Source of the DNA: Bispira polyomma
Lineage: Eukaryota
Length of the DNA: 64,000 nt
Direction: 5' to 3'
NCBI GenBank assembly: GCA_965649765.1
Contig: OZ287759.1
Span: 35,154,001-35,218,000, forward strand
The notes under the pieces were generated by a model, which saw only the letters and a list, made by a program, of their open reading frames with translations, was not told the DNA's origin and made no database searches. The position numbers were made by a program, and so were the translations under genes. Below, in pieces: positions 27,217 through 62,772 of this stretch (the first letter of the stretch is position 1; each line of letters starts with the position of its first letter).

Positions 27217-27959
27217 CAGTGAAAGGGTTAACACCAGACTACAACTAACTCTATATCGTTTGTACAGGACAGTGAAAGGGTTAACACTGGACTACAACTA
27301 ACTTTATATATTTGTACAGGGCAGTGAAAGGGTCAACACCAGACTACAACTAACTCTGTATCCTTTTTACAGGACAGTAAAAGGGTTAACACCAAACTAC
27401 AACTATCTCTATATCCTTTGTACAGGAAAATGAAAGGGTTAACATCAGACTACAACTAACTCCATATCCGTTGTACAGAACAGTGAAAGAGTTAACACCA
27501 GACTACAACTAACTTTATATACTTTGTACAGGGCAGTGAAAGGGTTAACACCAGACTGCAACTAACTCTATATACTTTGTACAGGACAGTGAAAGGGTTA
27601 ACACCAGACTAGAAATAACTCTATATCTTTTGTACAAGACAGTAAAAGGGTTAACACCAGACTACAACTGACTTTATATACATTGTACAGGACAGTGAAA
27701 GGATTGACATCAGACTACAACTAACTCTATATACTTTATACAGGACAGTGAAAGGGTTAACATCAGACTACAACTAACTCTATATACTTTGTACAGGACA
27801 GTGAAAGGGTTAACATCAGACTACAACTAACTCTATATACTTTGTACAGGACAGTGAAAGGGTTAACATCAGACTACAACTAACTCTATATACTTTGTAC
27901 AATACAGTGAAAGGGTTGACATCAGACTACAACTAACTCTATATACTTTGTATAGGACA
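27217..27959 (+). repeat. 53-bp acceptor-site tandem array (~14 copies) before the ATG-containing exon of the vWA gene
   Basis: Unit ...actacaACTAACtctatatactttgtacAG|gacagtgaaagggttaac; last copy tttgtatAG|GACAatg leads into the signal-peptide exon. Confidence 0.9.
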
Positions 27960-28002
27960 ATGCTCTACAATCAGTGGTCGGTATAAAGTAAGCAGACCTA
28001 AG

Positions 28003-28093
28003 ATGTCAAAGATCCCAGTGCTCTGTCTGGTGTGTGGACACCTGTTATTGACCTTGTGGAGCCAAGGGGTAAGGTCACAGAGTGTGGTCAGAG
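28003..28093 (+). CDS. vWA/EGF gene coding exon 1 (signal peptide)
   Basis: [30 protein letters not shown]; donor AG|GTGAGT, phase 1. Confidence 0.75.
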
Positions 28094-31000
28094 GTGAGTA
28101 CATCTAGTATGTTGTGACCCAAATAGGTCTGGTGTCCTTTGGGGATATCTCAACAGAATATTGTTATGGCAACACTATATGTACATGTAATGTTGGAACA
28201 GAGTAAACTTAGTAACTGTAGTCAATTGTCTACAGTAATAATCTCTGACCTAACCACACATTGAGGGGCTGTATTCGGGAAAGTTGTATTCTTAACTTAG
28301 ACCTGACAATTTTGCACAAATATTTAAACATTTCTTTTATACTGCCTGGTGCATCTTCATGGTCAAACCACAATCATTAGTAACCTAACAACATTTCTTG
28401 ATGCACTTATGACTAAAACTAAAATAGTTACGTCTTCGACATTAGAATACAACTGAGACTCACCTATGACCTTCTTAAAGTAAAACCACCTCTACATAGT
28501 TGTATGAGTCTTCTTTTACCTTTATTGTCTACTTACTGAGATGTAACATCTGTCCTATTTGTTATCTCATATAAGGTATACAGTAGAATACTGTGTGGTA
28601 GTTGTTGTGTAACATAATTCTGTGTCTTTTTATACAACCCAATCCCTGGCAGGCTGTGATGGAGAGGCAGATGTCGTATTTCTACTTGTATCATCTGATG
28701 ATGTCACAGATGCTGACTTCACAAATGTCAAGGAGTTTGTGCGTAGCCTTGTTCTGGGGATGGATATTGCCTTTAACCACACCAGGGTGGGGGTAGCCAT
28801 CACAGAGGTGGGGGCATACAGACGGCTCTCCTTGAATGAGTTCAGTGACAAAGGTTACCTGATGAATGCCATTAACCTCATTACCAGGACAACCAGTGTC
28901 TCCACCAGTATAAGTAGTGCCCTGGCGTTTGTACGGGACAACATGTTCTCACTACAAGCTGGGGCACGAACCTTTATACCTGACATAGTCTGGATTATTG
29001 CCCCTGATTCCCTTGATTACGACTCTTCAGAGGTTTTACAAGAGATCCGGCTGACCAAAGAGAGATCCATGTTTGTAGGGATGGTTCTGTATGGTACAAG
29101 TAAACAAACTGATGAGAAGTTAAGGAGAGCCATGGACTTAGTGAGTGCTCCGTATGACAGAAGTCTGGTGTTGGTGACTGATTCAGGGGCGCTCAGTTTT
29201 GTGAGGGATACAACACTCACCGCCTTGTGTGTGGAGGTACCAGGTGAGTGGTGTACTTGTGTAACTAGGTATAACTAGGTGTATCTGTATGTTTACCTGT
29301 ATGTTTACCTGTATGTTTGCCTGTATGTTTAGCTGTATGTTTGCCTGTATATTTACCTGTATGTTTACCTGTATGTTTACCTGTATGTTTATCTGTATGT
29401 TTACCATTGTGTTTACCTGTAAGTTACCATTGTGTTTACCTGTATGTTTACCATTGTGTTTACCAATTTTGTTTTCCTGTATGTTTACCTGTATGTTTAT
29501 CTGTATGTTTACCATTGTGTTTACCTGTATGTTTACCTGTATGTTTACCATTGTGTTTACCTGTAAGTTTACCATTGTGTTTACCTGTGTGTTTACCATT
29601 GTGTTTACCTGTATGTTTACCTGTATGTTTACCTGTGTATTTCAGCCTGTGCTGGTCTGGCAGACATTGCCATTGTGTTAGACAGAACAGGCTCTATTGG
29701 TGCCAGAAACTGGGAGACGATGCTCAAGTTTGCCTCCCGTGTTGTAGAGAACATGTACATCTCTGCTGATGGAGTGAGGATTGCTCTGATTGTCTATGGC
29801 AGCACAGGTACAATAGAGTTCTACCTGGATGAAAATCGAGACAAGCTGGAGATCATGGCTGCTATAGAGGCTATTGAGTATGACGAGGCCCAGAGGACAA
29901 GGACTGACCTAGCCCTGGCAATGGTGACAAACCAGGTGTTTGGTGTGGGTCATGGAAACCGCTTGGGTGTAAGAGACATAACCATAGTCGTAACAGACGG
30001 CTCATCATCATTCGCTGATCTAACTGAAACAAGAGCCAAAGAAGCACACAATGCTGGAATACGGATATTTAGTATTGGAGTGGCAAATACATTTGACCAG
30101 TTCTTCCTGTCGGAGTTAGATAATATTGCTTCAGACCCAGACAACGACCATGTATTTCAAGTGACACATTTTAACAACTTGAGAGCGATTGAAGATACTT
30201 TGGTGAGAAGGACTTGTAGAGAGGCTCCACCCGGTGAGTACAAAGGACACTGACTAATCAAAGTGTAACTGAATGATCCTAAATATTAGGTGTAATGAGA
30301 AGTGATACAATAATAAGTCCTGTATCACCCAATGTTTATAGTAGAGATGTATTTAACAATCAGTACTAAGTCACCCTCTTTATGGTACAACTTCATAACT
30401 ACCTCATGGAAAGTCAGCTGTTAGTAAAAATGAATAATCGAGTATACTGTGAGGTACCAAAAATGTGTTCTCTATGGAAATGTGAGAAAGGACATTAATG
30501 CTATGTTGGCATTGAATGTAATATACCAGTTATCATTTGTGTATTTTCTGACTTCCGATATGGGTACATATAACTCAGATTGTAGTTCTCTGGGAGTGTC
30601 AAATCTTTCCATGTCTCTACTTCAGATTGTAAAAAAGCATGCGCTAAATGGTTGAGGTTATGGCTGTTATGGGTTAATGTTATATATAACTCGTTGTGAA
30701 GTATCTCCATGTTTCAGAGTATAAGCAGGTAGATGCTAGGGATTAGAAGGGGCAGGGTTAATGGTCAAGGTTATATCTTACTCATTGTTTTTAATGTTTC
30801 AGACTTAAAGAAGCAGGTAGATGCTAGGGATTAGAAGGGGTAGGGTTAGTGGTCAAGGTTATATTTTTCTCATTGTTCTCCATGTTTCAGACTTAGAGAA
30901 GCAAGTAGATGCAAGGGATTACAAGGGGTAGGGTTAGTGGTCAAGGTTATATCTTACTCATTGTTTTTAATGTTTCAGACTTAAAGAAGCAGGTAGATGC

Positions 31001-34000
31001 TAGGAATTACAAGGGGTAGGGTTAGTGGTCAAGGTTATATCTTAATCATTGTTCTTAACGTTTCAGACTATAAGCAGGTAGATGCTAGGGATTAGAAGGG
31101 GTAGGGTTAGTGGTGAAGGTTATATCTTACTTATTGTTCTCCATGTTTCAGACTTAAAGCAGAGTACGTAGATGCTAGGGATTACACGGGGTAGGGTTAG
31201 TGGTCAAGGTTATATTTTACTCATTGCTCTCCATGTTTCAGACTATAAGCAGGTAGATGCTAGGGATTAGAAGGGGTAGGGTTAGTGGTCAAGGTTATAT
31301 CTTACTCATTGTTCTCCATGTTTCAGACTTAGAGAAGCAAGTAGATGCAAGGGATTACAAGGGGTAGGGTTAGTGGTCAAGGTTATATCTTACTCATTGT
31401 TTTTAATGTTTCAGACTTAAAGAAGCAGGTAGATGCTAGGAATTACAAGGGGTAGGGTTAGTGGTCAAGGTTATATCTTACTCATTGTTCTTAACGTTTC
31501 AGACTATAAGCAGGTAGATGCTAGGGATTAGAAGGGGTAGGGTTAGTGGTGAAGGTTATATCTTACTCATTGTTCTCCATGTTTCAGACTTAAAGAAGCA
31601 GGTAGATGCTAGGGATTAGAAGGGGTAGGGTTAGTGGTGAAGGTTATATCTTACTTATTGTTCTCCATATTTCAGACTATAAGAATGGGTTAAGGTTACA
31701 TATTACTCACAGCAATATCCCATGTTTCTACTTTAGACTGTGAGAAGAGGGTAGATGTGATCTTTGCTCTGGATGCCTCTGGTAGTATCACTCGGCCTGA
31801 CTTTGAGCGTGTTGTTAACTTTGTCCGGGACCTGGTGAGTCGTATGGATGTTGACAGTGGTAATGCACACGTGGGTGTGGTCACGTTTGCTGATGAACCC
31901 AAACTACAGTTCCACCTCAATACGTACACCTCAACCTCTGATATCTCACGCGTCATCTCCCGCATCAGATACACCACTGGGAAGACATTTACCCATGATG
32001 CCTTGTACTATGTGAAGGACGTGATGTTTACAGAGGCCAATGGTGACCGACCAGATGTGGACAATATTCTAATCGTCATTACTGATGGGGATTCAGAAAA
32101 TGCTACCCAGACCATTGTGGCTGCCAGGGAGGTGAGGGCAGATGGCACAGGACTAATCTCCCTGGGTATTGGCGACTGGGTTGCAGAGTATGAACTGGAA
32201 GGCATGGCCAGTCACCCCAAAGTCAGGAACATGTTCCGTGTGGAGGACTATGAAACTCTCTTTACGGCCACAGATTTGCTAGTGGAGACTGTGTGTGATG
32301 GTAAGTGATTAGCTTACAAATCTTTAGATTTAACGTCACTTTTCAGTTCACTTTTAACAACCGGCAGGCTTATTAGTAAAGTAATGCTGAGCTGAGTAGT
32401 TCACTTTTAGACAACCGACAGGCTATTGGTAGAGTAAAGCTGAGCTTTAGGTAGTTCATCAAGGATTTCTGAACTGCCACCACTTTCCTTAAAAAACTTA
32501 GACAATTTTCACTCATACATCGTGTGGGTCAGATTAAAGGAAATGGTGGGAGGAGAGAGTATTTTACCTCTTGCCATCGAGCCCACTCCGCTCCCCCCCC
32601 TCTTTGTATTCACTTTGAGTAGGGAACTCTGAATAAAAACTTTGCAGTTAATTTGTAGGTTTGTTTAGATTACTTTTCATTTTACAACTGAATCATACTC
32701 ACTAGCTTTGTCAAAAAAGCCATGTTTGTTGCTGATGTTTGTGTTCTGTTACAGCCGAATCTCGAGTATTATGGAAATTATGTACATTACAAGCAAAGGT
32801 ATTCACCCACTAGATGTGTCTTGTTTTTAGTGGTAGATGACTGTAACAGCAATCCCTGTCAAAATGGTGGAATTTGTATTGACTCCATGAACCAGTACTA
32901 TTGTAAGTGTGCCTTGGGCTACACAGGAAGGGACTGTGACCAGTGTAAGTACTCTACTTTAGAATTTTGGCATACATTTTGGCATACATTTTTACACATT
33001 AAAGTTACTGTGTATTATAATTTTGTCTGTTTTAGGGATACCTTTTCTACACATTAAAGTTACTCTATAATAATTTAGTCTGTTTTGGGCATACCTTTTT
33101 ACACATTAAAGTTACTATGTATTATAATATAGTCTGTTTTGGCGTACCATTTTACACATTAAAGTTACTCTGTATTAAAACTGAGTCTGATTTGGCATAC
33201 ATTTTCACACATTAAAGTTAGGTCATAGTTAGAGTTAATACATACATGTTTCCCTCAGCCTGCCAGCACAAGGCAGACGTTGTGTTTGCTCTCGACTCAA
33301 GTGGTTCCATCAAGAGAGAGAACTTCCACGTCATGCAGCAGTTTGTACAAGATATCATACATGGTGTAGACATAGAGGGAGGGGCCAGAGTGGGGGTACT
33401 GACATACGCATCAGAGGCACAGGTGAGTAGGTGCGGCCGGATTAGGGGTACTGAGGTACACATCAAAGGCACAGGTGAGCACAGGTGGGGCCAGAGTGGG
33501 GGTACTGACACACACATCAGAGGCACTGGTGAGTAGGTGAGACCAGGGTGGGGGTACAGATGTATGTATCAGAGGCACAGGTGAGTAGGTCGTGCCAGAG
33601 TGGGGGTACTGATGTATGCATCAGAGGCACAGGTGAGTAGATGGGGCCAGAGTGGGGGTACTACGGTACACATCAGAGGCACAGGTGAGTAGGTGAGACC
33701 AGAGTGGGGTACTGATGTATACATCAGAGGCACAGGTGAGTAGGTGGGGCCAGAGTGGGGGTACTGATGTATGCATCAGAGGTACAGGTGAGTAGATCGG
33801 CCCAGAATGGGGTAACTGAGATTCGCATCAAAAGCACAGGTAAGTACAGGTGGGGCCAAAGTGGAGGTACTGATTTGCGCATCAAAGGTGCAGGGAATGC
33901 ATAATTGAATACATAGCTCTTTAAACTATGCCAAAAGGAATGCAGGGATGGAGCTGTTCTAATGTTTTGAGGGTAAACTATTCCATAGAGTAGAGAGCTT

Positions 34001-37000
34001 TATTTGCAAAACTTTTATCAAAGTAAACCTTTGACCTGTGTACTTTGGGCTTATATTTACTGACATACAGAGGCACAGGTAAGTAGGTGGGGATACTGAT
34101 ACAAAGAAATGAGGGGATAGTGTTGGTGTACTGATATACTAAATGTCAGGTAAATGGTGTGTGATACCCATTCACACACATATAAATACCTGTCACTTTA
34201 GTGATGTGATTACTTTTTAAATTCTGAGGTACATAGTTCCCTAATGTCTATGTGTGTCTGTCTGTGTGGTGGTTTTAAAAGCTAAATAATGTTTTAAATG
34301 TTTAAAATATGTCTCAACATGAATACATATAGATCATGTCAAGTCAGAATATATACTTAGTTGCCTGTTTTGACATTTTATAAATACACTAATAGTAGGA
34401 TTTAATTAAACTATTTAAATGGAATGTTTGTAGAAAAAGTGTGTATATATTTATCTGATATGTTTTATAAGGTTAGCGTTAAGTTCTTCACTGTATTTGT
34501 TCTATATTGCTCATTTACAAATATAATGCCCACTATTGTCTGTGGTCTGTTTCCCAAAATGTGTTTACAATTGACTCATTAGCCTCGTCAACTTAGTAAA
34601 GACAAAACGACAATTACATCTTTAACCTGGTTTTCACTCAAAGAATTCTCTTTGTTGTAAGATTGAGGTGGGTTATTTTATGTATTTCTCTTATAATACA
34701 ACCCCTCATTATGAAATCTACCTGCGCAATTTATATACATTATATATGTCTTTGAAACTTTTTTTCATTGCATCAAAGAAAAGAAAACAATTTCTTAAAA
34801 AACCAGGCCCATTTAGTATTTAATGTGTGGTGAATTCTATTGGTGTTTGAGGGGGAGAGTGTCAAAGTGTTGTCTATAAAGGCTTTCAGAAATAGTATCA
34901 GTATCAAATAAAAGTGTTTTCGTCTTTAATTTACATTTGATTTGTTTACTATATTGTCATAATTTTCATGGTCGTTTTTGTTGTACATAAAGAAATACTA
35001 TTTATTATTAGTATATAACAGCAGACGTCCTTATGGCAGGTTATATATTCAGCTTGTACAAAATACTACAAAATTACACACCTACACACGAGACCTAAAT
35101 GTGTACTCCTTACACAACCAAACCATTTGGATATTCATTAATCAATAAGGTTTATTATTATTATTATTATTATTATATGATTTAAGGTTACTATTTACAA
35201 CTGTAGTATACAATGCTAAAATTTCTGTAGTTGATACATTGGCAGTGATTGCCTATTCAGACATATGTAAACTGATCCTATTTTACTGTATAAGGTTTGT
35301 TCTTGACTGTACTATTTACTTTGCCATCATGTAAGCCAATAATGTAGATCCACTTTAGTTCAGATTAGATACCTTAAAAAGCTTTACCATCCGAGGGATC
35401 AGGACAAATCTTCACCTTTCAGAAAAAAAAAAAAAAAGTAATCCAAGTGGTCTTACGGTTTGTAACTAATATTCACTCCAGTCTTTGAACAGCTCTCTAG
35501 CTGTCTGACATCAATTGAATCGTGAACGAATCATTCTGAATTGAAGTTAATCCCAGAGTAAACAGAATTTCTACTTATTGGTGCTACCATCAGAGGGAAA
35601 CGATTCTAACGTTATTTCCTGCAACTCTCCTGAGTAACAATACTCTTCCAATTCTCTGTCCAATGCCCTTCAAAAATACGTTTCAAACATCTGTCGATCC
35701 TGCGACTGCAACATTCATGACTTTTGTAGGGTTCGTCAACACCAAACTTTGGAAAATGCTGTTGCAATTGGAAATACCCTAGTGGCTTGTTGTCTTGATT
35801 ACTGCAACTCACTATCACATGGTATCGGAGAGGGGCAAATAAACAAGTATAAAATTCAAGGTAAATGTCCTCATTTTTAAGACTGCCTATGTGCAGCAGT
35901 CTCTCCACCTCTGACTTCTTACCCCCAAAAAAAACTAGCATGTTCAAATCATTTAAGGATGCAGCACATGCTGAATGAAATAATCTCCCTATCAGTCTTT
36001 ACACTGAGACAAGGATTAAAAAAAACCTCTCAAAACACATCTGTATCATCTTGCATTTCCGTTTTAACATTAGTCTGCTTGTTTTGAATAACCTTACATT
36101 ACAAACCTTTTCTTCTATCGGACTATTTTTTTGCTTACTGATTTGGATGTGCGCCACATTGATTGTGGTGCTATAGAAGTAAATCTTTCACATTATCAAC
36201 ATTACTCAGAATCCTCCGTCAGGAAACATCAATGGCTCTTCAACATGGCTCTTTCGTAACCCTTCACACATCCAGCTTCTGACTTGGAACCTTTTTACCC
36301 CTCTACTATTCCCACTACAGCATGTTTTATATTCGCCATAAGGAAGAAATTACATTTTGTTATATTTACATAATTTATGATAATGACATGTGTACAGAAC
36401 ATCCAACCCACCACAGGCCTTATATGTCACTAATCTAAATCTAACTAATCTAAACACAAAACATAATGCATGGTGTCAAAAGAATGACTACTATATGTAC
36501 CAGTACATGTATAAGAAACTATTTCTGAGATTTTAAGCTTTTTCAATAAATAAATGTAGAGGTTTTAATTCTTTCTTCATAACTTAAAAAAATACACAAT
36601 CATGCACGGAAACAATTGAAATCTCCAGAATATAATTCGCTTTCTCCAATAAGGTCAAACTCATCCTCGATCTTAACAATACACTTAAACACTTTCTCTC
36701 ACTAAATGGGATGTTTGTATATCTACCAACTACAACAGCTAGAGCTGAAATCATCATTCGTAATTTGTCACACTTCGTTGACATTTTGATATATTGTATG
36801 GGATTTTACTTAACTGCTTTAAAGTAATTTTTCCACTTTCTGTAAGTTTACATTAAACTTTATTATTGCACATACTACAACTAAGCTCTGACCAATATGG
36901 GTTCAAATCCAGTTTGTTCCTTTACGCAAGAATGTTTGTCAGGTACTTGACATATGTTAGTGGTTTTCAGTGCTTTATCACTAGTTTCTTCCACCACTGC

Positions 37001-40000
37001 ATCTGGCCGCCGCAATATGACCTAAGCTGTGGAAAGCAAACTAAATTGAATTCACACCACTACACCGACTCTTATTACTGCAGTAATGTCACTTCAGGCG
37101 GTGTTTAACTTGGGGGATTATAACACCACACAAGCAGTGCTGAATGCCTTTAACCTCCGGTTTTCTGGGGGGACAACAAACACTGCAGCTGCTCTGAGGT
37201 TATTAAGAGATTTGATGTTTACACCGAACAATGGGGACAGACCAGACAACATCAATGTGGTGATACTGATTACTGATGGCAAGTCTGATGACAGGTATAG
37301 TGTAATGAGACATGTATAGTGTGATGACAGGTGTAGTGTGATGAGAGGTATAGTGTGATGACAGGTATAGTCTGATGACAGGTGTAGTGTGATAACAGGT
37401 GTAGTATGATGACAGGTATATTGTGATGACAGGTGTAGTGTGATGACAGGTGTAGTGTAATGGCAGGTATAGTGTAATGACAGGTATAGTGTGAGGACAG
37501 GTATTGTGTAATGACAGGTGTAGTGTAATGACTGGTGTAGTGTAATGAGACAGGTATAGTCTAATGAGAGGTATAGTGTGATGACAGGTATAGTGTAATG
37601 ACAGGTGTAGTGTAATGACTGGTGTAGTGTGATGGCAGGTGTAGTGTAATGACAGGTGTAGTGTGATGGCAGGTGTAGTGTAATGACAGGTGTAGTCTGA
37701 TGACAGGTGTAATGTGATGACAGGTATACTGTAATGACAGGTGTAGTGTAATGACAGGTGTAGTGTGATGGCAGGTCTAGTGTGATGACAGGTGTAGTGT
37801 AATGAGACAGGTATAGTGTGATGACAGGTGTAGTGTGTTGACAGGTGTAGTGTGATGACAGGTATGGTGTGATGACAGGTGTAGTGTGATGACAGGTGTA
37901 GTGTAATGACAGGTATAGTGTAATGACAGGTATAGTGTGATGACGGGTGTAGTGTAATGACAGGTATAGTGTGATGACAGGTATAGTTTAATGACAGGTG
38001 TAGTGTGATGGCAGGTGTAGTGTAATGACAGGTGTAGTCTGATGACAGGTGTAATGTGATGACAGGTATAGTGTAATGACAGGCGTAGTGTGATGGCAGG
38101 TCTAGTGTGATGACAGGTGTAGTGTAATGAGACATGTATAGTGTGATGATAGATATAGTGTGATGACAGGTGTAGTGTGATGACAGGTGTAGTGTGATGA
38201 CAGATATAGTCTGATGACAGGTGTAGTGTGATGACAGGTATGGTGTGATGACAGGTGTAGTGTGATGACGGGTGTAGTGTAATGACAGGTATAGTGTGAT
38301 GACAGGTATAGTTTAATGACAGGTGTAGTTTAATGACAGGTGTGGTGTAATGACAGGTGTAGTCTGATGACAGGTATAGTGTAATGAAAGATATAGTCTG
38401 ATGACATGAAAAAAGGTGTATATGTGCAATTGTGATAAACTTAGTGACAGTCATTCGGAATATGGGGACAAGTGACACACTGGGCCAAGAACAAGCAGCT
38501 GTGATGCTCATTGGTGATGGCTTTATGTGCACCTGTGCATGAACAGGACACTAAAAACATTCTGCATGCATGTAGATTCCCTGATAAAAGTATACCGCTA
38601 TGTGGTGGGCACGTTTAATGTTAATTTAAATTACCTGACCACAAATAAAGGTGAAAAATTACTAGTTGCAAAGTAAGGTACATTTTGACAGCACATTGCA
38701 ATCGTTTAACATTACTACATGTAATTCACATTCTCTGAACAGATTTAAAGTCACAACTAAAGAGAAGTGCCAAATGTCTAATGTGTAAGTTATCTTACCA
38801 CAGAGAGCGGACACTTGAGGAAGCGGTAGAAACCAGAAATGCAGGAATACACTTATCTGTGATTGGAGTGGGACAAAGTATCCGGCCAGCTGAACTGAGG
38901 GGTGTGGCGACAGATCCAGATGATAAGAATGTGTACACAGTGAAAGACTTTAACGCACTTACAGGGATCATCACTAATGTGCTCAATGATGTGTGCAATG
39001 GTAAGGGACTATTAAGTAATTCGTGTCAAACAATCGTGTCTGCTGAAAATGGTGAGGGAGCATGAAGTAATTTATGTTCAACGATGTCAGGGACAATTGT
39101 TAGGGTGCATTCAGTAATTAATCTTTAATTATGTTTTTGTAAAGGTAAGAGGACATTAATTAATCCATTTTAATGATGTCTGCAATTCTAATTAAAAGAA
39201 AATTAGAATATAAGATTTTGTTGGTCATCTTTGATAAATCTGGTAATTCTACCTTTTCTAACCTTTTCTTGAACACTATATCCTATATCCCAAAGTTGAT
39301 TCACCGGATCTAATTGAATGTAATCAACAAGACCATGTCATGATTATTCTATGACAATTTGAATATAGTATCATATCTGGTAATAGGTAAAGACAACTAT
39401 AAAAACATTAAATTGTCAGCTAAGAAAGCACTAGACTTGGAAGGTAATTCTTCTTTACAATTGGGTAAGATAGTGTTTTTTGGGGAATGGACTAAAGTTT
39501 TTATTACATATATATAACGAATATTAAAAATATATGCTTTAATTCCACAGAATAGATTATATTTCTAGTGATTTATTGTCACAATTCACATAATTTTAGT
39601 TACAGTAGCTTTAAATTGTATTGTACTTCCACAGAAAACAATGATTGCTCTCCCAATCCTTGTCAGAATGGTGGCACCTGTCTGGATGGTATTGGGATGT
39701 ACACTTGTAGGTGTGCACCTGGATTTACTGGACCCCAGTGTGAGAGAGGTGAGCTGGCTACCCGGTGTTAGTCATAGATTCAAGTATAACATAGATATAT
39801 CTGAAATTTAGTTGAATAAATACTGTGAAACCAACGGTTCTGTCAATTTGTGCATGTTTTAGATTTTAAAAAGTAACTTAAGAAGTGCTATATTTACTCA
39901 TATACCCACTTCAACAAGCAGAAGTAAAATCAAAAAATTTAATTAGAACTGGAAAAATGTTAATTATTACTCACATAACAATTAGATAGTCTTCCACTTT

Positions 40001-43000
40001 TATCCCATAAATAACCTGTCATACCTCTTTTGTACCTGGCATTAAGATTAGTCTGTTGCAGTGGCATTTAACTGTCCACATGTCCCCCCGCTTATCACAC
40101 CCAGCTTGTGACACTGAGATGGACATTGTATTCATTGTGTACTAAGTAGTGATATCAGTCTGTTGAAATTGTATTTAACTGTACTTTATCCTTTATAACA
40201 CACATGTCCCCCCTCTTATCATACCCAGCCTGTGACAATGAGATGGACATTGCATTCGTTGTTGACTACTCAGGAAGTATCCAGAGAGAGAACTTTGCCA
40301 TGCTGGTCACCTTCCTCAAACTCCTGGTGGATGAAATGGATGTGGACTCTGGAAAGGTATCCCCAGAGTAACAGCAATACTTCATGTGATAAATAGGACC
40401 GTTTTAATGTTAATGCGTTACAGCTATAACACAACAATGTTTTAAATATCCTCTGTTGCGAGAAAGGTTCACAATCAATCGTAAGCAGCAGACATGTTAA
40501 GGTGGAAAAGCTAGCTAATGTTTTGCATTTTCCCCCCGAAAGCCTGTAATCCTTTTCACAGTATGAAGATTATTCCATTCAACAGGTGCTGCAATTTGAA
40601 ATGATCTTTAAGCTGCTAGTTTTGGGTAAGTCAGAGGTGGTGAGATTGATAGGGGATAAAATAGAGGATAATCTGGACTCCCAGTACTTCATGTGGGCTC
40701 TTTACACAGATTATTCATGGTTACAAACCAGCAATATTAATGAACCAATATTTAAATAGAACCTCCGAATTTCACCATAGCCATACATGCTTGTTGCTTT
40801 GGCAAACACTGTCCCTGTTCCAACAATTTTGAATATGGAATATGTCATTTCATGTTTTTCATGATATCAGGTAAAACAACCTTTTCAGCAATATGCAATA
40901 GTCATGTATGTTACAAGTATTCTATGAAAATTATGTTTGATCAGTTCAATCTGTTCTAGTTTCTATTTCCATGCCCCCTACTGTTGCCAGTAGTTTCCTA
41001 GTTTGACACTGTTTATGTGACCTTCACCTAGGTGCGCGTGTCAGTACTGACTTACAGTGACAATACCACCATCAACTTCTACCTGGATGAGCATAACAAC
41101 ACAGAATACATCAAGTTCGCACTGGACAAACTCAAGTTTGAGGGAGGCAAGACCAACACAGCAGGTGGGAAACTAGTGACAAACTCAGATCACACCGATT
41201 TTAAATATATAATTATTTAGACCTAAAAAACATCTCAAGTAAAGTAGCTTATTGACGATTCAAATTTAGCAGCAATGATACTGCTGCTGGTTTGGTTTAT
41301 GACCGGTTATAGTAAGGATTATTTGATATTTTACATCATAGTACCAACTTTAAATGTTTAAATTTAGCAATACACTACAAAATGAAAATGCTCTATTTGT
41401 AAAGCAAAACTTTGCACACTATATCTGTCTAGAACTTATGCCATTGGCTAAAGCTAAAACTAGGGAGAGCTGCTTTGTGATTACTAGTCTTGGACCTTTT
41501 TGTAGACAAAATCAGTTTTGCCAGTCAGAACTAATTCTTGCATATATTTGACACTACACCCAGGCATGACTGCTATGGTATCTATGTCTAGTGGGAAGGT
41601 TTTTCTATCAAAGATGTTATGCTCATGACAATATTATCATCATTTTGACCTTGTAGTTACGATGATCTTAACCTTAAGTGTCTTGTCCAAAACTATTCCT
41701 ACAGCTCCAAATAAATCTGGATTTGGCAACATTTTCCCATATCCTATATTCACTGTTTTACCTTGAGTAATTGTGCTTACAATACTGCCTGAATGATATA
41801 TCAGAAGACATATCTTGAAGAATGATTATATTTTATTCAAATTGTTCAGACTGCCGACATGTCAGATCAGTATGCTGATATTTGAAAATTCTTACAACTT
41901 TTGTGTTGATTTTGTTTACAGCTGATGAAGTTTTTTGTACCTAGTCACCTCTGTTTGTTTACAGAAGCCATCAGTACTATGAGACAAGATCTCTTCAATG
42001 TAAGCAATGGTGACCGCCAGTATGTGCCAAACTTTGCACTGTTGTTTACTGATGGGGTGCCAAATATGAACGAACATATGACCGTGAAAGAAGCTATCAA
42101 GGCGAAGATTGATGGGACACATTTAATTTTGGTTACTATGGGTAAGACATCCAAATGTGTGTCACACACATACCACTATAGATAGTTGTAACATGTAATA
42201 CAGGAACTGCTGAAGGTGGGTTGTTTGCAGAAAAGAAACAACTTCATCAACTACTCTGTTCTGATTTCCTCCACCAGTGTTACTACTGTAACAGTAATAC
42301 GTAATACAACCTTGTGTATATTTAACAACACTTACATCATGTAATAACAGACTTCAAAGGAAGTCAACAAAATGGTACAAAGATGACTCACGACTTCAAT
42401 CTCTTTTACGGTACACTAGAATTGTTAAAGACATCCACAGACACCAATATCACTTATTTTCTAGTACACAAATTCTGAGGCAACATCTACTCACACCATA
42501 GTATAGTCCAAAGTCCAGACACAGAAAGCATTGGATATATTGCTTGCTTGATATTTTGTATTGACGAGTATAATACTGTACTATTTGTACACATCCGGTT
42601 CAGTTGTCAGTGTATTCCTGGTGTAGTGTGTCTTACTGTTTGTTTAAACACATCAGTTTCAGTTCTCAGTGTATTCCTGATGTACTGTGTATTACTGTTC
42701 TGTTTATACACATCAGGTTCAGTTCTCAGTGTGTTCATGGTGTAGTGTATATAACTGTTCTGTTTATACACATCAGGTTCAGTTCTCAGTGTATTCCTGG
42801 TGTAGTGTGTATTATTGTTCTGTTTATACACATCAGGTTCCTATATTCTCTATTTTTATTCTTTTTGTACACATCAGGTACAGGACTCACCAGAGGTCAT
42901 AACTACCTCAAACTTCAGGGTATCCCCAGCGAACCGACTGCTGCTAACTTCTTCAATGTCCCTCGTTACAGTGAACTGAACAGGATTGTACCCGAAGTGG

Positions 43001-48796: not shown

Positions 48797-49059
48797 TTTG
48801 AATTTGAATTTGGATATTTAACGTCCACTCTAGTACCTTTTAGTAGGTTATATTGAGATGTGTAGTTGATAACGCTGGAGGAAACACTGCATACAGTCGG
48901 TCAAGGTTCTGCAGAGAAACCAGCGGCCCACAGTAAGGAACTACCACATTTCCCACATAGGCATCGACGGGATTCGAACTCACGCCGCCCAGAGGTGAGA
49001 GACCAGTGATTGTGAAGCGCAATGCTTGCTAACCACTAGGCCACTGCGGCCCCACCTCC
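48797..49059 (-). mobile_element. Young tRNA-derived SINE, copy 6
   Basis: (CAAATT)n tail; 9-bp TSD caataggag. Confidence 0.9.
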
Positions 49060-49964: not shown

Positions 49965-50042
49965 CATGGGCCAGTCACTTTTCTCATGGGCCAGTCACTT
50001 TTCCCATGGGCCAGTCACTTTTCCCACGGGCCAGTCACTTTT
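49965..50042. repeat. 20-bp tandem repeat x4
   Basis: catgggccagtcacttttcc. Confidence 0.85.
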
Positions 50043-51051: not shown

Positions 51052-51177
51052 TTACTTTTTAAACTTTTTGAAAAGCGGGTGTTGATTGCGGCTGTTCTTT
51101 GACCTTGACCTGTATTCCATGTAGACAGCGTCATCGGCTCCTGATATAGAACTCATACTGCCAACACGCCTCTGCAT
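51052..51177 (-). CDS. ERCC3: TFIIH helicase/translocase XPB, terminal exon
   Basis: [41 protein letters not shown] matches the XPB C-terminus ([21 protein letters not shown]...HPLFKRFRK); acceptor ttttAG. Confidence 0.93.
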
Positions 51178-51914
51178 CTAAAACACAACGCATTAGTGGG
51201 ATTATTGGTGCAAGCTTTTTACTAAGGGTGACATTGATAAACAGTATACATTGAGGGGTCAAGTCTTCAAAAGGGGTAAAATAAAGTTAGTTATATTCTC
51301 AACAATTATATCTGATTTACAAACTTCATCCAAGGAGCTATAGCTTGAAACTTGATGCTTCCTTAGAGATAACCTGTATGGCGACTAATTCAAACCAAGT
51401 TCTTGACTTTGGCTAACTTTTAATGGCCATTTAGTTATTCTCTATCCCACGTTACCTGTGCACACCGAGAATGACATTCACACAGGCCCAATGGTACCTG
51501 GGATAGTAGTTTTCAATTAGGGAAGTATTTTAGCCACTGACTTAAGTTTTTAAGGTCAGGACAGCCCCTCGACTAAAATTAAACTATCTCTTTTTATCCG
51601 TCAAGTCACTCAAGTCAAGTTTTTTTTGGAACAGAAAGAGTTTTGGCTCATTGATACTATATTGAGGGTAAGTACGTAAACAAGTCATTCAGATACCTCG
51701 CATGTGACAGTAGGTATTTCCATTATAAGAAACCAAGTTACTGCGCATGCACCTCTAACACATGGACAGAATTCATCATGAAAACAGGCCCTAAACATAG
51801 ACGTCCAGTGAAATGTCATGGCTAGCTACAATATTCAATGATTTTATAAAATTCCCTCAAAAAGTGCTTTGACAGATGCAATTTTTGCATCATACTAATA
51901 ATATTAAAGCTCAT

Positions 51915-52730
51915 CAACCTGACCTTAGACAGTAGAGACGCCCACTCCCCCACCCCTCTCTATACAACCTTACCTTAGACAGTAGAGACGCCCACTCCCC
52001 CACCCCTCTCTATACAACCTTACCTTAGACAGTAGAGACGCCCACTCCCCCACCCCTCTCTATACAGCCTTACAGTGGACAGTACAGACACCCTCCTTCC
52101 CCCACCCTTCTCTATACAGCCTTACCTTAGATAGTAGAGACGCCCCCTCCCCCACCCCTCTCTATACAGCCTTACCTTGGACAGTAGAGATGCCCCCTCC
52201 CCCACCCCTCTCTATACAGCCTTACCTTAGACAGTAGAGACGCCCCCACCCCTCTCTATACAGCCTGACCTTAGACAGTACAGACGCCCCCTCCCCCACC
52301 CCTCTCTATACAGCCTCACCTTAGACAGTAGAGACACCCCCACCCCTCTCTATACGGCCTTACCTTAGACAGTAGAGATGCCCCCTCCCCTACCCCTCTC
52401 TATACAGCCTTACCTTGGACAGTAGAGACGCCCCCTCCCCCACCCCTCTCTATACAGCCTTACCTTAGACAGTAGAGACACCCCCTCCCCCACCCCTCTC
52501 TATACAGCCTCACCTTAGACAGTAGAGACGCCCCCACCCCTCTCTATACAGCCTTACCTTAGACAGTAGAGACATCCCCTCCCCCACCCCTCTCTATACA
52601 GCCTTACCTTAGACAGTAGAGACGCCCCCACCCCTCTCTATACAGCCTTACCTTAGACAGTAGAGACATCCCCTCCCCCACCCCTCTCTATACAGCCTTA
52701 CCTTAGACAGTAGAGATGCCCCCTCCCCCA
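51915..52730 (-). repeat. 50/44-bp donor-junction array (~16 copies) in the last XPB intron
   Basis: Minus-strand unit ggggagggggcgtctctactgtctAAG|GTAAGGctgtatagagaggggt copies the end of exon 52702-52824. Confidence 0.95.
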
Positions 52731-52824
52731 TCAATCTTTCCTCCTCAGCGTCAGTATCGTTGGCTGCACACACTTTCTGAAGTAACTGGGCTTGTTCTTC
52801 TTTAGTGCTGTAGTACAGATCCGC
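52702..52824 (-). CDS. ERCC3: XPB penultimate exon
   Basis: [41 protein letters not shown] (compare XPB [28 protein letters not shown]); phase 0-0. Confidence 0.93.
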
Positions 52825-52964
52825 CTGAAACAGAAAGATTGACCCAACTGAAGTCATTGAAAGTAATGTCAAACTATCCATTTCTGTTACCAGGAGTGGG
52901 CTGTGGATTCTCTACATATTAACTATAATAGACAGCTCTTGTCACCCAAGTCTTACATTGATTG

Positions 52965-53410
52965 ACTGCTTGTAGTTTAACATCCATTTTGGCACATTGT
53001 ATCGGTTATAGGTTTGATTCTTTCTGCAGGCCTGGAGATTGTACCCTTGGACAAGGTGCTTTACACATAGTTGTCCCTCTCAACCTAGGTGTATAAATGG
53101 GTGCCTGGTCGCTAATCGGTGTTAGTCTGAGCACTGTATGTGGCCGCACGGCTAGTAAACTCCCTGAGGGAGCTGAGACTGTACAATGGTTGGCAGGTTA
53201 AAGAACCAAGACATTAGATAACAGTGGCATTGATAGTGCGTTATATCAAATGAATAATTATTATTATCAAGATTCTGCACTGGTGATCCACCAGACATCA
53301 GCAAATAACTGCCAACTTTCTCACACAAAACCATAGCCGAGATTCAAACCCACGACCTCAAAGGTGGGAGGTCAGTGTGTTACCTACTATGCCACTACTA
53401 AGCCCCCTAG
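52965..53410. mobile_element. Two old SINEs tail-to-tail (CORE-type on +, 52965-53245; 13181-family on -, 53250-53410) in an XPB intron
   Basis: cccttggacaaggtgctttacac...caacctaggtgtataaatgggtgcc; and aactgccaactttctcac...gccgagattcaaacc. Confidence 0.6.
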
Positions 53411-53468
53411 TAAGTCTTACATAATAATATGTCTAAGGTTATCCCTTTTTTAGCAATACACTGCCTAC

Positions 53469-53617
53469 CTCCTCCATCCCAGCTAACTTAGTAATGACTT
53501 TGTAGCTGTAACCTTGGTTGACTAGGAAACGTTGTCTCTTAGTGGCGTAGTTCATCTCCATGGTGTCCTGGGAGACGAGAGTGTAGAAGAAAGCATTGTA
53601 CTCCTCTGCTACCGCAC
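53469..53617 (-). CDS. ERCC3: XPB antepenultimate exon
   Basis: (G)[49 protein letters not shown], near-identical to XPB; phase 1-0; not in the ORF track in this frame. Confidence 0.95.
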
Positions 53618-53990
53618 CTACAAGTACAGGAGGGTAAAGTTATCACCCCTACTATAAGTAGGGCAGTATAGGATAAAGCTAGCACCCCTACAACAAGTAG
53701 AGGTAGATAGGATAAAGCTAGCACCCATACTACAAGTAGAGGAGTACAGGATAAAGTTATCACCCCTACTACAAGTAAAGGAGTAGAGGATAAAGTTATC
53801 TCCCCCACTACTACTACAGGAGTAGATGATAAAGTTATCACCCCTACTACTGTACAGGAGTAGAGAGGATAAAGCTATCACCCTACTACAAGTACAGGAG
53901 TAGAGGATAAAGTTATCACCCCTACTACAAGTACAGGAGTAGAGGATAAAGTTATTACCCCTACTACAAGTAGATGAGTACAGGATAATG
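53615..53990 (-). repeat. ~39-bp acceptor-site array (~9 copies) upstream of XPB exon 53469-53617
   Basis: Minus-strand unit ggtgataactttatcctctactcctgtacttgtAGtagg; real acceptor cctcctgtacttgtAG|GTGCG. Confidence 0.88.
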
Positions 53991-53994
53991 GTGA

Positions 53995-54910: not shown

Positions 54911-55282
54911 GGGAGGCAAGGGTGAGCAGTATTTTGCTATGTGGATGATTCTTGGAGAGTTTATAAAATTTACCTTACAAAGATTGCTGATACAGGCACA
55001 ATTGTTGTATAATCCTTACACTATTTAAGTGTATAATTAACCCAAAATACTTTACTATATATAGTAACATCCAGTTTACAGGATAATTGTCGTCCTACAT
55101 ATTTGTCTGTGCACCTGTTGATGCATGCAAATAATATTCCTAGAAGAGTATCCAGTTATTCCTAAAACCCGGAGGTAAACATCGATTACAGATTTCCATG
55201 GAAATTTTGTTGGTGTACATTTATTGAAGGTTGGAACTAATAGATCTGATCAGTGTGCAAGCACTTGCAAGGTAAACAATGA

Positions 55283-57468: not shown

Positions 57469-57584
57469 TAGACTAATCCAGATCATGGGTGGAGCGACAT
57501 GGAAGGCACAAGATGTACCCCGTTAATAGACTAATCCAGATCATGGGTGGAGCAACAGGGAAGGCACAAGATGTGCCCCATTAA
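57469..57584. repeat. ~58-bp direct duplication downstream of MMP
   Basis: tagactaatccagatcatgggtggagc...gaaggcacaagatgt..ccc.ttaa twice. Confidence 0.85.
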
Positions 57585-58087: not shown

Positions 58088-59690
58088 TTAGGTCATTAAG
58101 TTAATGAGATTGCCTTTCATGTCAATCAGTACTTTTTTCTGTGTGTACAAGCCGGTCTTTCCTTTAGTTGTCTCCTTGGCAGTGTGATGGTATATTCCTG
58201 ACCCCTGGTGTGTGTTGTCCCTCTCCACCACACTAGCAGTAGTACCGGTCCAGTCCTTCATCTCCTCTGGATCCTCCTGGATCTGTGCTGTTCCAGACTT
58301 AGGACATCCAAACCACCAGGTGGCTGTATCCCTGGGATAGGGATCGCCTGGACTTGAATCTATGGCACCTTTAACTTTAGACATCCTGTAATACTGGGTC
58401 CCTCTAAAGAAGTAGGTGTGTACCATGCTGTCTATGTAGAGACTCAGACTGGCGTCTATTGGTGTGGTCAGTCCTTTCACTGTGTTAGAGAGTGACCGTG
58501 GGTAGCCGCTATCTACCCGCCCTGTGCCTACCCTCCGAGTCACCCTCCAGTACTGATCTCCCTTCACAAAGTACACCTTCCTCCCGTCTACTGTAAACAC
58601 TGTGTCTATAGGGGTAGGGATGCCTGGGTACAGCTCACTGATAGCTTGACTCTGAACAAACGCCGCCGAGTCCAACACTCCATCCTCGTACATAAAGTAG
58701 TGGTCACCTTTAAACAGTAACAGTTGCTGGCTCTGTACCCGTTTATAGGAAGAACAGTGACTAGTGACGCCGTCATACTTACACCGATACTGCCAGAGCT
58801 CAGGCAGATAGAGCCCTGCGTCCAGGTCTCTAGGCAACTCGGGAAAGGCATTACCAATGAGTTGTGGGTAGCCGGTTACATGACCTGGTTTATACAGATC
58901 TATCTGAGTAACGTACTGACCAGTGAACACAAAGATACGACCCTGTCTGTCTGTGGTGACAGCGTCCACAGAGGGGTCAGTACACAGGTCAATGTCTGCT
59001 TTGGGTGACTGGTCCAATGTGGGGGTGGTAGGTTCTGAAGTCTCAGGGCTTGTGGACTGGTCCAATGTGGGGGTGGTAGGTCTTGAAGTGGGATTATTAG
59101 TAGTTTGTGTAGTAGGCTGTGGTGCTGTAGTGGAGTGCAGTGTAGTAGACACAGATGTTGACTCTGTAGTGCTGTCCCCTGTAGACCCAGGCATGCCATA
59201 CAAGTGCTGGATACCCTCAATGTCATCTCTATGAAGTAGGACTTCAAAGCCAGGCCTGTAGTAAGGATACATGACCGAGTTATAGACATTGGAATGACCT
59301 AACCCTAAGGCATGACCTATCTCATGGAGTACCACCTGGTACAAGTCTTTGGACCTCTGTGTTAGCCGTCTAATCACCCAGGGCTCCGTGTCATCCACAT
59401 GGATATCTCCAGCATAAAACAGACTCCGTGGAGAGTAGGCGTGGGCGAGTACCCCCCCTTTCCCGTCAAACGGGTAGGAGTCACCATGACTACCGTTAGT
59501 AAACTTGATGTCAATATCTGCTGTGTGGGAGAGGTGGTGTTTGGTAAAGGTTAGACCAGAGACCTCCTGCCACTGACTGAAGGCTTCCTCTACTGTGTAC
59601 TGAGTGTCTGACTCACTCACACTGTGGGGGGAGTTAAGGACTCGGTATGTGAGGGCAGTCTTCTGCCACCCAGCTTCCAGTATTGTGTAC
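58088..59690 (-). CDS. Matrix metalloproteinase exon 2 (catalytic domain, Thr-rich hinge, hemopexin domain, C-terminal tail)
   Basis: HGDSYPFDGKGGVLAHA, HEIGHALGLGH zinc motif, SVMYPYY Met-turn, hemopexin DA...FFRG/GYPR repeats ending WFGC. Phase-2 acceptor ttacAG|GTAC gives RKKR-YTIL. Confidence 0.95.
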
Positions 59691-59992
59691 CTGTAATATT
59701 GTAAATATAGAGTATTGTGTACCTGTAAAATAGTAAATATAGAGTATTGTGTACCTGTAATATAGTAAATATAGAGAGTTGTGTACCTGAAATATAGTAA
59801 ATATAGAGTGTTGTGTACCTGTAATATAGCAAATATAGAGTATTGAGTACCTGTGATATAGTAATTATAGAGTACTGTGTAAATGTAATATAGTAAATAT
59901 TGAATATTGTGTACCTGTAATATAGTAAATATAGAGTATTGTGTACCTGTAATATAATAAATATTGAGTATTGTGTACCTGTAATATTGTAA
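59681..59992 (-). repeat. 32-bp acceptor-junction array of the MMP intron, proximal block (~10 copies)
   Basis: Minus-strand unit ctctatatttactatattacAG|gtacacaata, identical to the real junction. Confidence 0.95.
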
Positions 59993-61631
59993 CAAGAGGA
60001 GAATGGCCTGGCGGCCATATCATGATAATGCCACTAAAAGCTATTGTGAGATTCACATAAAGTATTTACAATTTGTAAATTATATCAAGGTAAATAATAA
60101 TGCTTTTTGTATTTTGCTTTATTTATCTATATGAAATACATCAATGGTTAGATTTTAGAAATAAAACAGTTGCATTTTTCTTTAAAAACATACAGAAATC
60201 CATCCCACCAAAATAAAAGATCAACTGTTTTTGTTCTCTTTTTTGAACAGTGTGTAAATCTGGTATGTTATACACGTGTCATTGTATGCCCCATTCACAC
60301 ATTGGTGGTATGGTAGGAGGTACTTACAAATTTTTATAACTTGTCATTCCGCGTGCCATTCCGGCTGATCCATCTAGAAGAAATATAACTTTCAAATGGC
60401 GTAAAACTTGTCAGATAAGTTTCACAGAAAATTACTGGAACTAAAGTTATGGTAGGGATACGGAAATACTAAGATTTCTGAGTACTAAGTTTTTTAAGTG
60501 AAAGATTTCTTAGTGATATACTCGGGAAGGAAAAGGCAATTTTCATAACTTCTCTTATAATCTTTCCATACCGTCATAGTGTGAACCCTACATTAGTATG
60601 TAGATGTGTTAATCACTTGTTTCTAAAAAAACTGTTCAAGACTTGACATCATGGTATACATGTTTTACTTTACTATATTGAAATACAAGATATATATTTT
60701 ACTTGTTGACTGGAATTTCTTCAAGAAATATGGATTTACCTTAAATATAAACAAAAGTTCTGATGATGTAAAATCTTTGGTAAGACAATGTAACAAAAGT
60801 TCTGATGATGTGAAATCTTTGGTAAGGCAATGTAGCATATTTTTTGTATCTTGCAACTGAACTTACACTGCAAAGTCATAAATCTAAACTATCCAGACAT
60901 GGTGCTGATAGATTTATGGTTGCACACAGCAGGGGATGGGGGAGGGAAAAAAAACATTTAAAGGTTCCGAAAGACACTTATTCCATAGACTGTATATTGG
61001 GTTCACAATATTTTTTTCCTCAGCTTGATACAGTAAAGAATCTAAAATTTGCTCCTGTATCTAAAATTTGCCACCCCTAAAATTTAAGCCAAATAAATAA
61101 AAACTGGAAAAAATAACTGGTAAGGAAGGCCAATATTAGTCATAAAAATATCAATTGAAGCAAATATTTTTAACCACAATTCCACCCAAAACACGTTTTC
61201 TAGGTGGCGAATTTTAGATGGTGGCAAATTTTATATTTCTTACAGCCACAACCACCAATCAACCAAAGTATATATATATATATATAGGTTATATATCTTC
61301 CCAAACCTGATGTTTATCATACACTGTATATATATATTCCCTTTGAAACCATTTGAAATGGGCGGTAATGGACCCTTCAATCAAATCTGAGGCTCCCAAT
61401 ATATAAAACTTTAATAACTTCTACTATACTGCACATAATCACACCAAATTAATTTTGGACCAACTAGAGACAAAAGAGTGTATATATACCAAATATAAAA
61501 GCACAAATCCCTACAGATTCAGAGATTACGCTGTGGACACGTTGTAACCATGCGTAACCAAGGGTCTTTCACTATCTCCTTCTGTCTCTACTAAAACATG
61601 ATTATGCCAATAAGCATTGGCATAATCATGC
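59993..61631 (+). mobile_element. ~1.64-kb insertion (Helentron/Helitron-like, probably composite) splitting the 32-bp array
   Basis: Array phase continues across it (tattgtaa|...|aaatatagag). Starts (aa)caagag; ends with a perfect 15-bp hairpin catgattatgccaat-aagc-attggcataatcatg (61597-61630). No TSD seen beyond the A run. Confidence 0.6.
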
Positions 61632-62182
61632 AAATATAGAGTATTGTGTATCTGTAATATTGTAAATATAGAGTATTGTGTACCTGTAATATAGTAAGTA
61701 TAGAGTATTGTGTACCTGTAATATATTAAATATAGAGTATTGTGTACCTGTAATATATTAAATATAGAGCATTGTGTACCTGTACTATTGTAAATATAGA
61801 GTATTGTCTACCTGTACTATTGTAAATATAGAGTGTTGTGTACCTGTACTATTGTAAATATAGAGTATTGTGTACCTGTAATATATTAAATATAGAGTAT
61901 TGTGTACCTGTACTATTGTAAATATAGAGCGTTGTGTACCTGTAATATATTAAATATACAGTGTTGTGTACCTGTACTATTGTAAATATAGAGTGTTGTG
62001 TACCTGTACTATTGTAAATATAGAGTGTTGTGTACCTGTAATATATTAAATATTGAGTATTGTGTACCTGTACTATTGTAAATATAGAGTATTGTGTACC
62101 TGTAATATATTAAATATAGAGTATTGTGTACCTGTACTATTGTAAATATAGAGTGTTGTGTACCTGTAATATATTAAATATA
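61632..62182 (-). repeat. 32-bp acceptor-junction array of the MMP intron, distal block (~17 copies)
   Basis: Same unit as 59681-59992 (tattgtgtacctgta(a/c)tat...aaatatagag). Confidence 0.95.
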
Positions 62183-62189
62183 AGGTTTT

Positions 62190-62772
62190 ATTTAACAAAT
62201 CTCATTTCGTTTATTTCTATTGATCTTTCTATAACAAATCTCACTTTTTCTTTATTTCCTGTTACAGTTTACAAAACAAATTTTCTTTGTTTTTGTTCCT
62301 CTATACTGTTAACAGAACACTATAAGAAATATCAACTTTTATTTCTATATTCTATTAAGCTCAATACAACAACTCTCATTTTTCTATATTTCTATTGAAC
62401 GGTCTATAATAAATCTCACTTTTCTACATACCATTGACCTTTCACTGACCAGTCTCACTTGTCTATTACCCTTTCTCTACCAAATCTCACTTTTCTATAT
62501 ACCATTGACCTTTCTCTAACCAATCTCACTTTTCTATATACCATTGACCTTTCTCTAACCAATCTCACTTTTCTATATTCCATTGACCTTTCTCTAACCA
62601 ATCTCACTTTTCTATATACCATTGACCTTTCTATAACAAGTCTCACTTTTCTATAAAATTATATCCATTGACCTTTCTCTAACAAATCTCATCGTTTCTA
62701 TATTCCATTGACCTTTCTCTAACCAATCTCACTTTTCTATTACCCTTTCTCTAACCAATCTTACCTTTTCTT
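62190..62772 (-). repeat. 39-bp donor-junction array of the MMP intron, decaying distally
   Basis: Minus-strand unit agaaaa|GTGAGattggttagagaaaggtcaatggtatat versus real AGAAAAG|GTAAGattggttagagaaagg. Confidence 0.9.

What the first reader, a model, noticed from the sequence alone, without database searches (positions are those of the whole stretch)
27217..62772. Pervasive splice-site-seeded tandem arrays: each junction amplified into its own private decoy array
Seen: at least 12 arrays in three unrelated genes (vWA/EGF, XPB, MMP; both strands) have units that are copies of the adjacent exon-intron junction. Donor arrays: 33381 (52 bp), 37282 (17 bp), 43370 (46 bp), 51915 (50/44 bp), 62190 (39 bp). 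Acceptor arrays: 27217 (53 bp), 30705 (85-90 bp), 40045 (124 bp x2), 42575 (60 bp), 44125/44300 (30 and ~100 bp), 53615 (39 bp), 59681+61632 (32 bp). The units are unrelated to one another, so this is not a mobile repeat family. Arrays always grow into the intron, leaving the coding-compatible site as the first donor or last acceptor. Known: isolated junction-spanning VNTRs exist (e.g. the human CBS exon 13/intron 13 repeat), but I do not know of this density, about a third of the junctions here. Inference: either a duplication process is focused on splice junctions (e.g. spliceosome/R-loop-linked breaks or RNA-templated repair), or duplications arise everywhere and only junction-safe ones survive. 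Both require strong exon-definition splicing that ignores many near-perfect decoys.
Basis: partly seen in the sequence, partly recalled or inferred. Interest (0 to 1): 0.92.

Follow-up and report, generated by a model that had tools for sequence, protein, structure and literature searches.

The report
Splice-junction minisatellites ("mirages") genome-wide
In this animal about one exon edge in eight (one in three in this window) has been copied head-to-tail into the neighbouring intron, leaving rows of look-alike splice sites; such repeats are already named "mirages" in lancelets and look like tolerated by-products, but here they are common across the genome and nearly absent from a relative.

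Summary
Observation confirmed: 12 of 36 junctions in three genes (vWA/EGF, XPB, nested MMP) carry locus-private tandem arrays, and DNA-read contigs match four of them. It is not confined to this window: in 63 dynein introns from 17 genes on nine other contigs, 14-15 of 126 junctions are copied, and 12 of 13 clear arrays span a junction (3.0 expected, P=1e-7). A relative with the same intron positions has 0-1 of 92, and 1 local duplication against 27, so this is a lineage-specific burst, not intron gain. These are the "mirages" of amphioxus genes and resemble the human F7 intron-7 VNTR, where splicing stays normal. Growth "into the intron" is a geometric necessity, not evidence of a mechanism. 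Decoys drift neutrally and real sites are not weak. Enrichment is about 3-fold for all duplications but 20- to 36-fold for intact or multi-copy arrays. Donor units keep about 8 intron bases, acceptor units about 41. Best reading: a duplication-prone genome, events biased to exon edges, filtered for intact splice signals; the cause is untested. No RNA data exist. The scan had already reported this on other DNA of this genome; the name came from those notes.

The parts
27956..45527 (+). vWA/EGF secreted-protein gene, 15 exons, 1295 aa; hosts 8 junction arrays
27217..27959 (+). Acceptor array, 53 bp x14; last AG at 27955 precedes the exon with the start codon (upstream exon not found)
30704..31685 (+). 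Acceptor array, 85-90 bp x11, about 21 exon nt per unit; real acceptor 31736 has diverged from the array
33383..33888 (+). Donor array, 52 bp x9.7 (45 exon + 7 intron nt); real donor 33423; 6 of 8 decoys score as high as the real site
37282..38406 (+). Donor array, 17 bp x66; real donor 37295
40045..40268 (+). Acceptor duplication, 124 bp x2; real acceptor 40228
42574..42889 (+). Acceptor array, 60 bp x4.5 plus diverged anchor copy; real acceptor 42877
43370..43902 (+). Donor array, 46 bp x11.7; real donor 43412; 4 of 9 decoys have lost GT
44134..45003 (+). Acceptor array, about 101 bp units near the exon, older longer units and a 30-bp x5 sub-array; real acceptor 44952
51052..53617 (-). Last three exons of XPB/ERCC3; earlier exons lie beyond the window end
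51918..52730 (-). XPB donor array, 50/44 bp x16.7; real donor 52701
53618..53988 (-). XPB acceptor array, 39 bp x9, purely intronic unit ending at the AG (53618); absent in the relative
58089..63099 (-). Two-exon matrix metalloproteinase gene (645 aa) nested on the same strand in an XPB intron
59679..59992 (-). MMP acceptor array, 32 bp x9.8; real acceptor 59691
61632..62182 (-). Detached part of the same 32-bp array (x17), separated by about 1.6 kb of other sequence
62374..62772 (-). MMP donor array, 39 bp x9.5; real donor 62764; decoys weak
29285..29636 (+). 12-bp x29 array abutting acceptor 29645; unit has no AG; not counted among the 12

Best explanation
These are 'mirage' minisatellites: DNA-level tandem duplications of 17-130 bp that straddle an exon-intron border and are then amplified like ordinary minisatellites. 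Shown: this lineage makes short local duplications far more often than a relative; the introns are older than the arrays; intact and multi-copy arrays sit at junctions far above chance; the copies drift without coding constraint. Inferred: duplication and especially amplification are biased to exons and their edges (for example recombination or repair that starts in exons); duplications inside exons are purged, and those that survive leave one intact exon with a whole donor (about 4-13 intron nt) or a whole branch point, pyrimidine tract and AG (about 20-85 nt). Inferred from F7 and amphioxus work: ordinary exon definition and upstream-first donor choice use the site next to the exon, so the arrays are tolerated, not functional.
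For: Enrichment in an independent sample: 12 of 13 arrays at junctions vs 3.0 expected, P=1e-7; all local duplications 14 of 27 vs 7.5, odds 2.8; those with 2.6 or more copies 9 of 10 vs 2.0. Shuffles give none; the relative has 1 cluster in 23 kb vs 27 in 37 kb. Orthologous MMP, XPB and dynein introns are at the same positions in the relative without arrays. Intron part of the unit: median 8.5 (donors) vs 41 nt (acceptors), P=5e-4; acceptor units with under 20 intron nt are depleted, 2 vs 6.5, P=0.014; donor units with 13 or fewer are in excess, 7 vs 3.0, P=0.007. Differences in exon-derived parts are even across codon positions, 31/21/32, P=0.22; unit length shows no frame bias, 8 of 33 multiples of three. 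Precedent.
Against: The cause of the exon-edge bias is not shown. Acceptor arrays outnumber donor arrays (16 vs 9 in complete introns, not significant), whereas an exon-centred source predicts more donors. Several arrays hold no exon bases or only abut the acceptor. Low-copy duplications show no junction excess (5 vs 5.5), so the bias may act only on amplification. The 33-array set used for unit anatomy was curated by hand after inspection. Samples are small and come from one gene family plus this window. No RNA data.
Confidence: 0.55

Rival explanations
1. Transcription- or splicing-coupled instability: polymerase pausing, R-loops or nicks at splice sites make the stretch from branch point to donor break and re-anneal out of register.
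For: The affected zone is shifted towards the acceptor side, and arrays with no exon bases end at or just before an AG (53618, 29645, three in dynein introns). Donor-side breakpoints cluster 4-13 nt past the GT.
Against: Breakpoints are scattered, not at the splice sites; the survival filter alone predicts much of the donor/acceptor asymmetry; the relative has the same introns and almost no arrays. Germline expression was not testable.
Confidence: 0.2
2. Uniform duplication plus shielding: duplications arise everywhere, but intron interiors turn over by deletion and insertion while sequence beside an exon is protected.
For: Interior duplications are real and common (13 clusters, none in shuffles), most are partial or interrupted, and low-copy events show no junction excess.
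Against: Shielding from one side should give roughly a two-fold effect (my reasoning), not 20- to 36-fold for intact arrays; 9 of 14 junction clusters but 1 of 13 interior ones reached 2.6 copies, P=0.004.
Confidence: 0.13
3. Selected splicing aids: extra U1 or U2AF sites beside the exon strengthen exon definition or tune expression through decay of mis-spliced RNA.
For: Most decoys keep GT or AG (124/142, 71/80) and many score as high as the real site; all 10 array donors follow AG.
Against: Real sites at arrays are not weaker (donors 11.3 vs 8.6 bits, acceptors 7.6 vs 7.9); decoys were found by similarity to the junction, which inflates retention; AG before GT is the norm here (55 of 71); arrays are not conserved in the relative and decay in old cases.
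Confidence: 0.07
4. Intron gain in progress by duplication of AG/GT proto-splice sites (Rogers model).
For: Proposed for amphioxus mirages; some units contain CAG/GT.
Against: Array-bearing introns tested (MMP, XPB, dynein) are at ancestral positions in the relative; acceptor-array exons start with GT no more often than others (7/23 vs 20/64).
Confidence: 0.03

Closest known systems
'Mirage' minisatellites of amphioxus (Adh3, globins BflGb6/9, troponin C, PGBD5; PMC3087553, PMC3902484)
   Same: Tandem duplications of exon-intron borders, both donors and acceptors, units of 10-160 bp, many with intact AG/GT, end copies often diverged, origin unexplained.
   Different: In the papers I could read they are described gene by gene, without a null test. 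Here the frequency is measured (11-12% of dynein junctions, 33% in this window), tested against intron interiors and nearly absent in a relative. The animal is probably not a lancelet (dynein exon 78% identical to the best Branchiostoma floridae hit, 87-89% to unnamed relatives).
Human F7 intron-7 37-bp VNTR (PMC1557585)
   Same: First unit spans the exon-intron border; following units carry identical donors; only the most upstream one is used.
   Different: A single locus, donor side only; it explains tolerance, not frequency.
Human CBS exon 13/intron 13 VNTR and CBS 844ins68 acceptor duplication (from memory, not checked)
   Same: Junction-spanning repeats with mostly normal splicing.
   Different: Isolated cases.
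Intron creation from tandem duplication (Rogers 1989; Zhuo 2007; Gao and Lynch 2009, as cited in PMC3087553)
   Same: Duplication of splice-site-containing DNA.
   Different: Those create new introns; here the tested introns are ancestral.

Membership tests
Mirage minisatellites | Tandem unit spans an exon-intron border | tested here: met
   11 of 12 window arrays hold exon and intron bases; 53618 holds intron only and ends at the AG
Mirage minisatellites | Occur at both donors and acceptors, units about 10-160 bp | tested here: met
   10 donor and 23 acceptor cases, 17-130 bp
Mirage minisatellites | Many but not all copies keep GT/AG | tested here: met
   124/142 and 71/80
Mirage minisatellites | Normal splicing of the mRNA is unaffected | not testable with these tools
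   No RNA run; only the open reading frames and conserved intron positions are consistent with it
Mirage minisatellites | Copy number differs between haplotypes or cells | tested here: inconclusive
   Three runs of one study show no second form over 39900-45400; contigs drop variants
Mirage minisatellites | Concerted evolution with end copies left out | tested here: inconclusive
   Clear in some arrays (42877, XPB 21-mer, anchor of 31736), not in others; farther copies less like the anchor in 13 of 18
Mobile or dispersed repeat family | Related units at several loci | tested here: not met
   Only cross-hit is between paralogous dynein exons; window units hit only their own intron. Not searched genome-wide.
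New introns by tandem duplication | Intron absent from the orthologous gene of relatives | tested here: not met
   MMP intron, XPB acceptor and dynein C6 intron conserved in the relative
RNA-templated insertion | Unit ends at splice sites or contains spliced exon-exon joints | tested here: not met
   Exon share of the unit runs from 0 to 0.91; units align as contiguous genomic copies

The most novel reading that the evidence does not exclude
This lineage has a transcription- or splicing-guided DNA process that aims tandem amplification at the stretch between branch point and donor, making splice junctions the main nursery of its minisatellites and a source of intron growth.
Probability: 0.2. 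Interest if true: 0.8.

Novelty: new member of a known kind. Interest (0 to 1): 0.5.

Why it matters
The origin of mirages has been called unclear since they were described in single lancelet genes. A genome with them at roughly one junction in eight, next to a relative almost without them, makes the origin testable by breakpoint statistics and population data. It also offers many natural cases of a real splice site competing with identical neighbours, including acceptors where the last AG must win. Practically, such arrays will mislead gene prediction and spliced read mapping in this genome.

Tried and rejected
RNA evidence: none on record. Assembly artefact: not supported. Dispersed repeat family, intron gain, RNA templating, compensation for weak sites, recursive AG/GT self-correction and reading-frame bias: each tested and not supported. 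My first interior control was contaminated by the far ends of junction arrays and was redone. In the per-dinucleotide version donors were only slightly above interior GTs (4/63 vs 16/428), acceptors clearly above (11/63 vs 8/414). The original mirage paper (PMC117041) is not held. The organism could not be named.

Full report
Setting. The window is C12:35154001-35218000 of a 1.035-Gb animal genome in 75 contigs. It holds a 15-exon vWA/EGF gene on the plus strand (27956-45527), the last three exons of XPB on the minus strand, and a two-exon matrix metalloproteinase gene. The next XPB exon upstream lies 1.6 kb past the window end, so the MMP gene is nested on the same strand in an XPB intron of about 12 kb. 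The organism could not be named; its dynein exon is 78% identical to the best Branchiostoma floridae hit and 87-89% to unnamed relatives, so it is probably not a lancelet. An earlier scan note calls it an annelid; I did not check that.

The observation. Joining exons at the first donor and last acceptor gives open frames of 1295 aa and 645 aa and a normal XPB end. Twelve of 36 junctions carry an array. Units are 17-124 bp and match only their own intron. Contigs from three DNA runs cover 39900-45400 with no differing letters, including diverged internal copies; these runs may be the assembly's source, so this excludes gross assembly error but says nothing on variation.

Is it more than chance? 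Because the window was chosen for its arrays, I used loci picked only by a dynein domain search: 17 genes on nine other contigs. A spliced alignment to reference dyneins gave 63 introns agreed by at least two of three references. With arrays collapsed to one unit and placed at random, 12 of 13 clear arrays span a junction against 3.0 expected (P=1e-7); with a looser threshold 12 of 24 against 3.6. A more sensitive scan finds 27 local duplications, none in shuffled sequence: 14 at junctions against 7.5 expected (odds 2.8, P=0.005). The excess lies in the intact and amplified ones: 9 of 10 with 2.6 or more copies, but 5 of 17 against 5.5 for the rest. So 11-12% of dynein junctions are copied; this window is about three times richer.

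Age and distribution. One ENA assembly (ERZ22147071) holds orthologues of the MMP gene, the neighbouring XPB exon and two dyneins. Intron positions are the same, including introns that carry arrays here, and 0 of 92 junctions pass the test (one weak candidate by the second method), against 15 of 126 (P=2e-4 to 3e-3). A fish dynein (0 of 158) and a second animal (0 of 48) have none, though their introns are shorter. The relative also has almost no local duplication of any kind (1 in 23 kb vs 27 in 37 kb, P=2e-5). The arrays are therefore younger than the introns, the first donor and last acceptor are the ancestral sites, and the lineage is duplication-prone in general as well as at junctions.

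Anatomy. In 33 hand-curated cases the exon share of the unit runs from 0 to 0.91, so breakpoints are not at splice sites, and units align as contiguous genomic copies. Donor units keep a median of 8.5 intron bases and acceptor units 41 (P=5e-4); acceptor units with fewer than 20 are depleted and donor units with 13 or fewer are in excess. The lower limits fit a survival filter that needs a whole donor or a whole branch point and pyrimidine tract; the excess of exon-heavy donor units suggests events that begin in the exon. These tests were chosen after seeing the data. Decoys mostly keep GT or AG and often score as high as the real site; real sites are not weak; unit lengths show no frame bias; exon-derived parts change evenly across codon positions. 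Old arrays drift from their anchor (30704, 42574, 62374), spawn sub-arrays (44134) or are split by insertions (61632). This is how neutral minisatellites behave.

Mechanism. Shown: elevated local duplication, junction bias strongest for amplified arrays, ancestral introns, neutral drift. Inferred: duplication and amplification favour exons and their edges, exon-internal events are purged, and normal exon definition tolerates the rest (0.55). Rivals: transcription- or splicing-coupled breakage (0.2), uniform origin with shielding from intron turnover (0.13), selected splicing aids (0.07), intron gain (0.03). No RNA run exists for this organism, so which sites are used is inferred from reading frames and orthology only.

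What is known. Tandem duplications of exon-intron borders are named 'mirages' in amphioxus Adh3, globin, troponin C and PGBD5 genes, with 10-160 bp units, both borders, normal splicing and unclear origin (PMC3087553; PMC3902484). In human F7 a 37-bp VNTR gives five to nine identical donors, of which only the most upstream is used (PMC1557585). The arrays here meet the structural features of mirages; normal splicing and length polymorphism could not be tested. I found no paper that counts them across a genome, but the library lacks most subscription journals. Earlier notes of this scan report the same pattern on other pieces of this genome and supplied the name; my counts were made before reading them and agree, and I checked the papers myself.

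Verdict. Real, genome-wide and lineage-specific, but a known kind of repeat and most likely a tolerated by-product. 

Noticed in passing
window 58089-63099 and L031: The MMP gene is nested on the same strand inside an XPB intron of about 12 kb; the relative also has the XPB exon downstream of MMP on the same strand, so the arrangement appears conserved. XPB splicing must skip the MMP donor, acceptor and their decoy arrays.
   Followed up: partly
window 25231-26364: A 72-bp duplication whose end seeds a 26-bp x39 array; the minus strand has CAG/GT in each unit. No exon identified; may mark an unrecognised untranslated or non-coding exon.
   Followed up: no
window 53997-54911: A 25-bp x38 array directly adjoining the 39-bp XPB acceptor array, unrelated to it.
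   Followed up: no
window 32964-33220 and 32345-32446: Two unrelated 53-bp intronic arrays that do not span a junction; the first fills most of a 314-bp intron.
   Followed up: partly
window 34065-34100: A lone decayed copy of the 33423 donor junction about 180 bp beyond the array end.
   Followed up: partly
window about 59000-59085 (minus strand): Short two-copy duplication inside the MMP coding linker, by eye about 48 nt and in frame; a surviving exon-internal event.
   Followed up: no
window 49951-50042, 57469-57584, 47810-47948: Small arrays downstream of the XPB, MMP and vWA stop codons, possibly in 3' untranslated regions; relevant to whether exons are the hot zone.
   Followed up: no
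window about 13225-13460, 17145-17385, 18360-18600, 20245-20490, 26870-27125, 48810-49050: Several copies of a short dispersed element of about 250 bp with a tRNA-like head, probably a SINE; seen by eye only.
   Followed up: no
window about 3600-6480: Broken open frames and a 12-bp coding-like repeat that look like a decayed DNA transposon of the Harbinger type; by eye, not tested.
   Followed up: no
dynein loci L030/L016/L019 and L027/L008: Interior duplications with perfect 21-24 nt copies separated by a short spacer; they may be a different class from the junction arrays.
   Followed up: partly
L032, L034/L035 (XPB beyond the window): All three further XPB acceptors examined have a duplication spanning or abutting them (21, 24 and 97 bp units).
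   Followed up: yes
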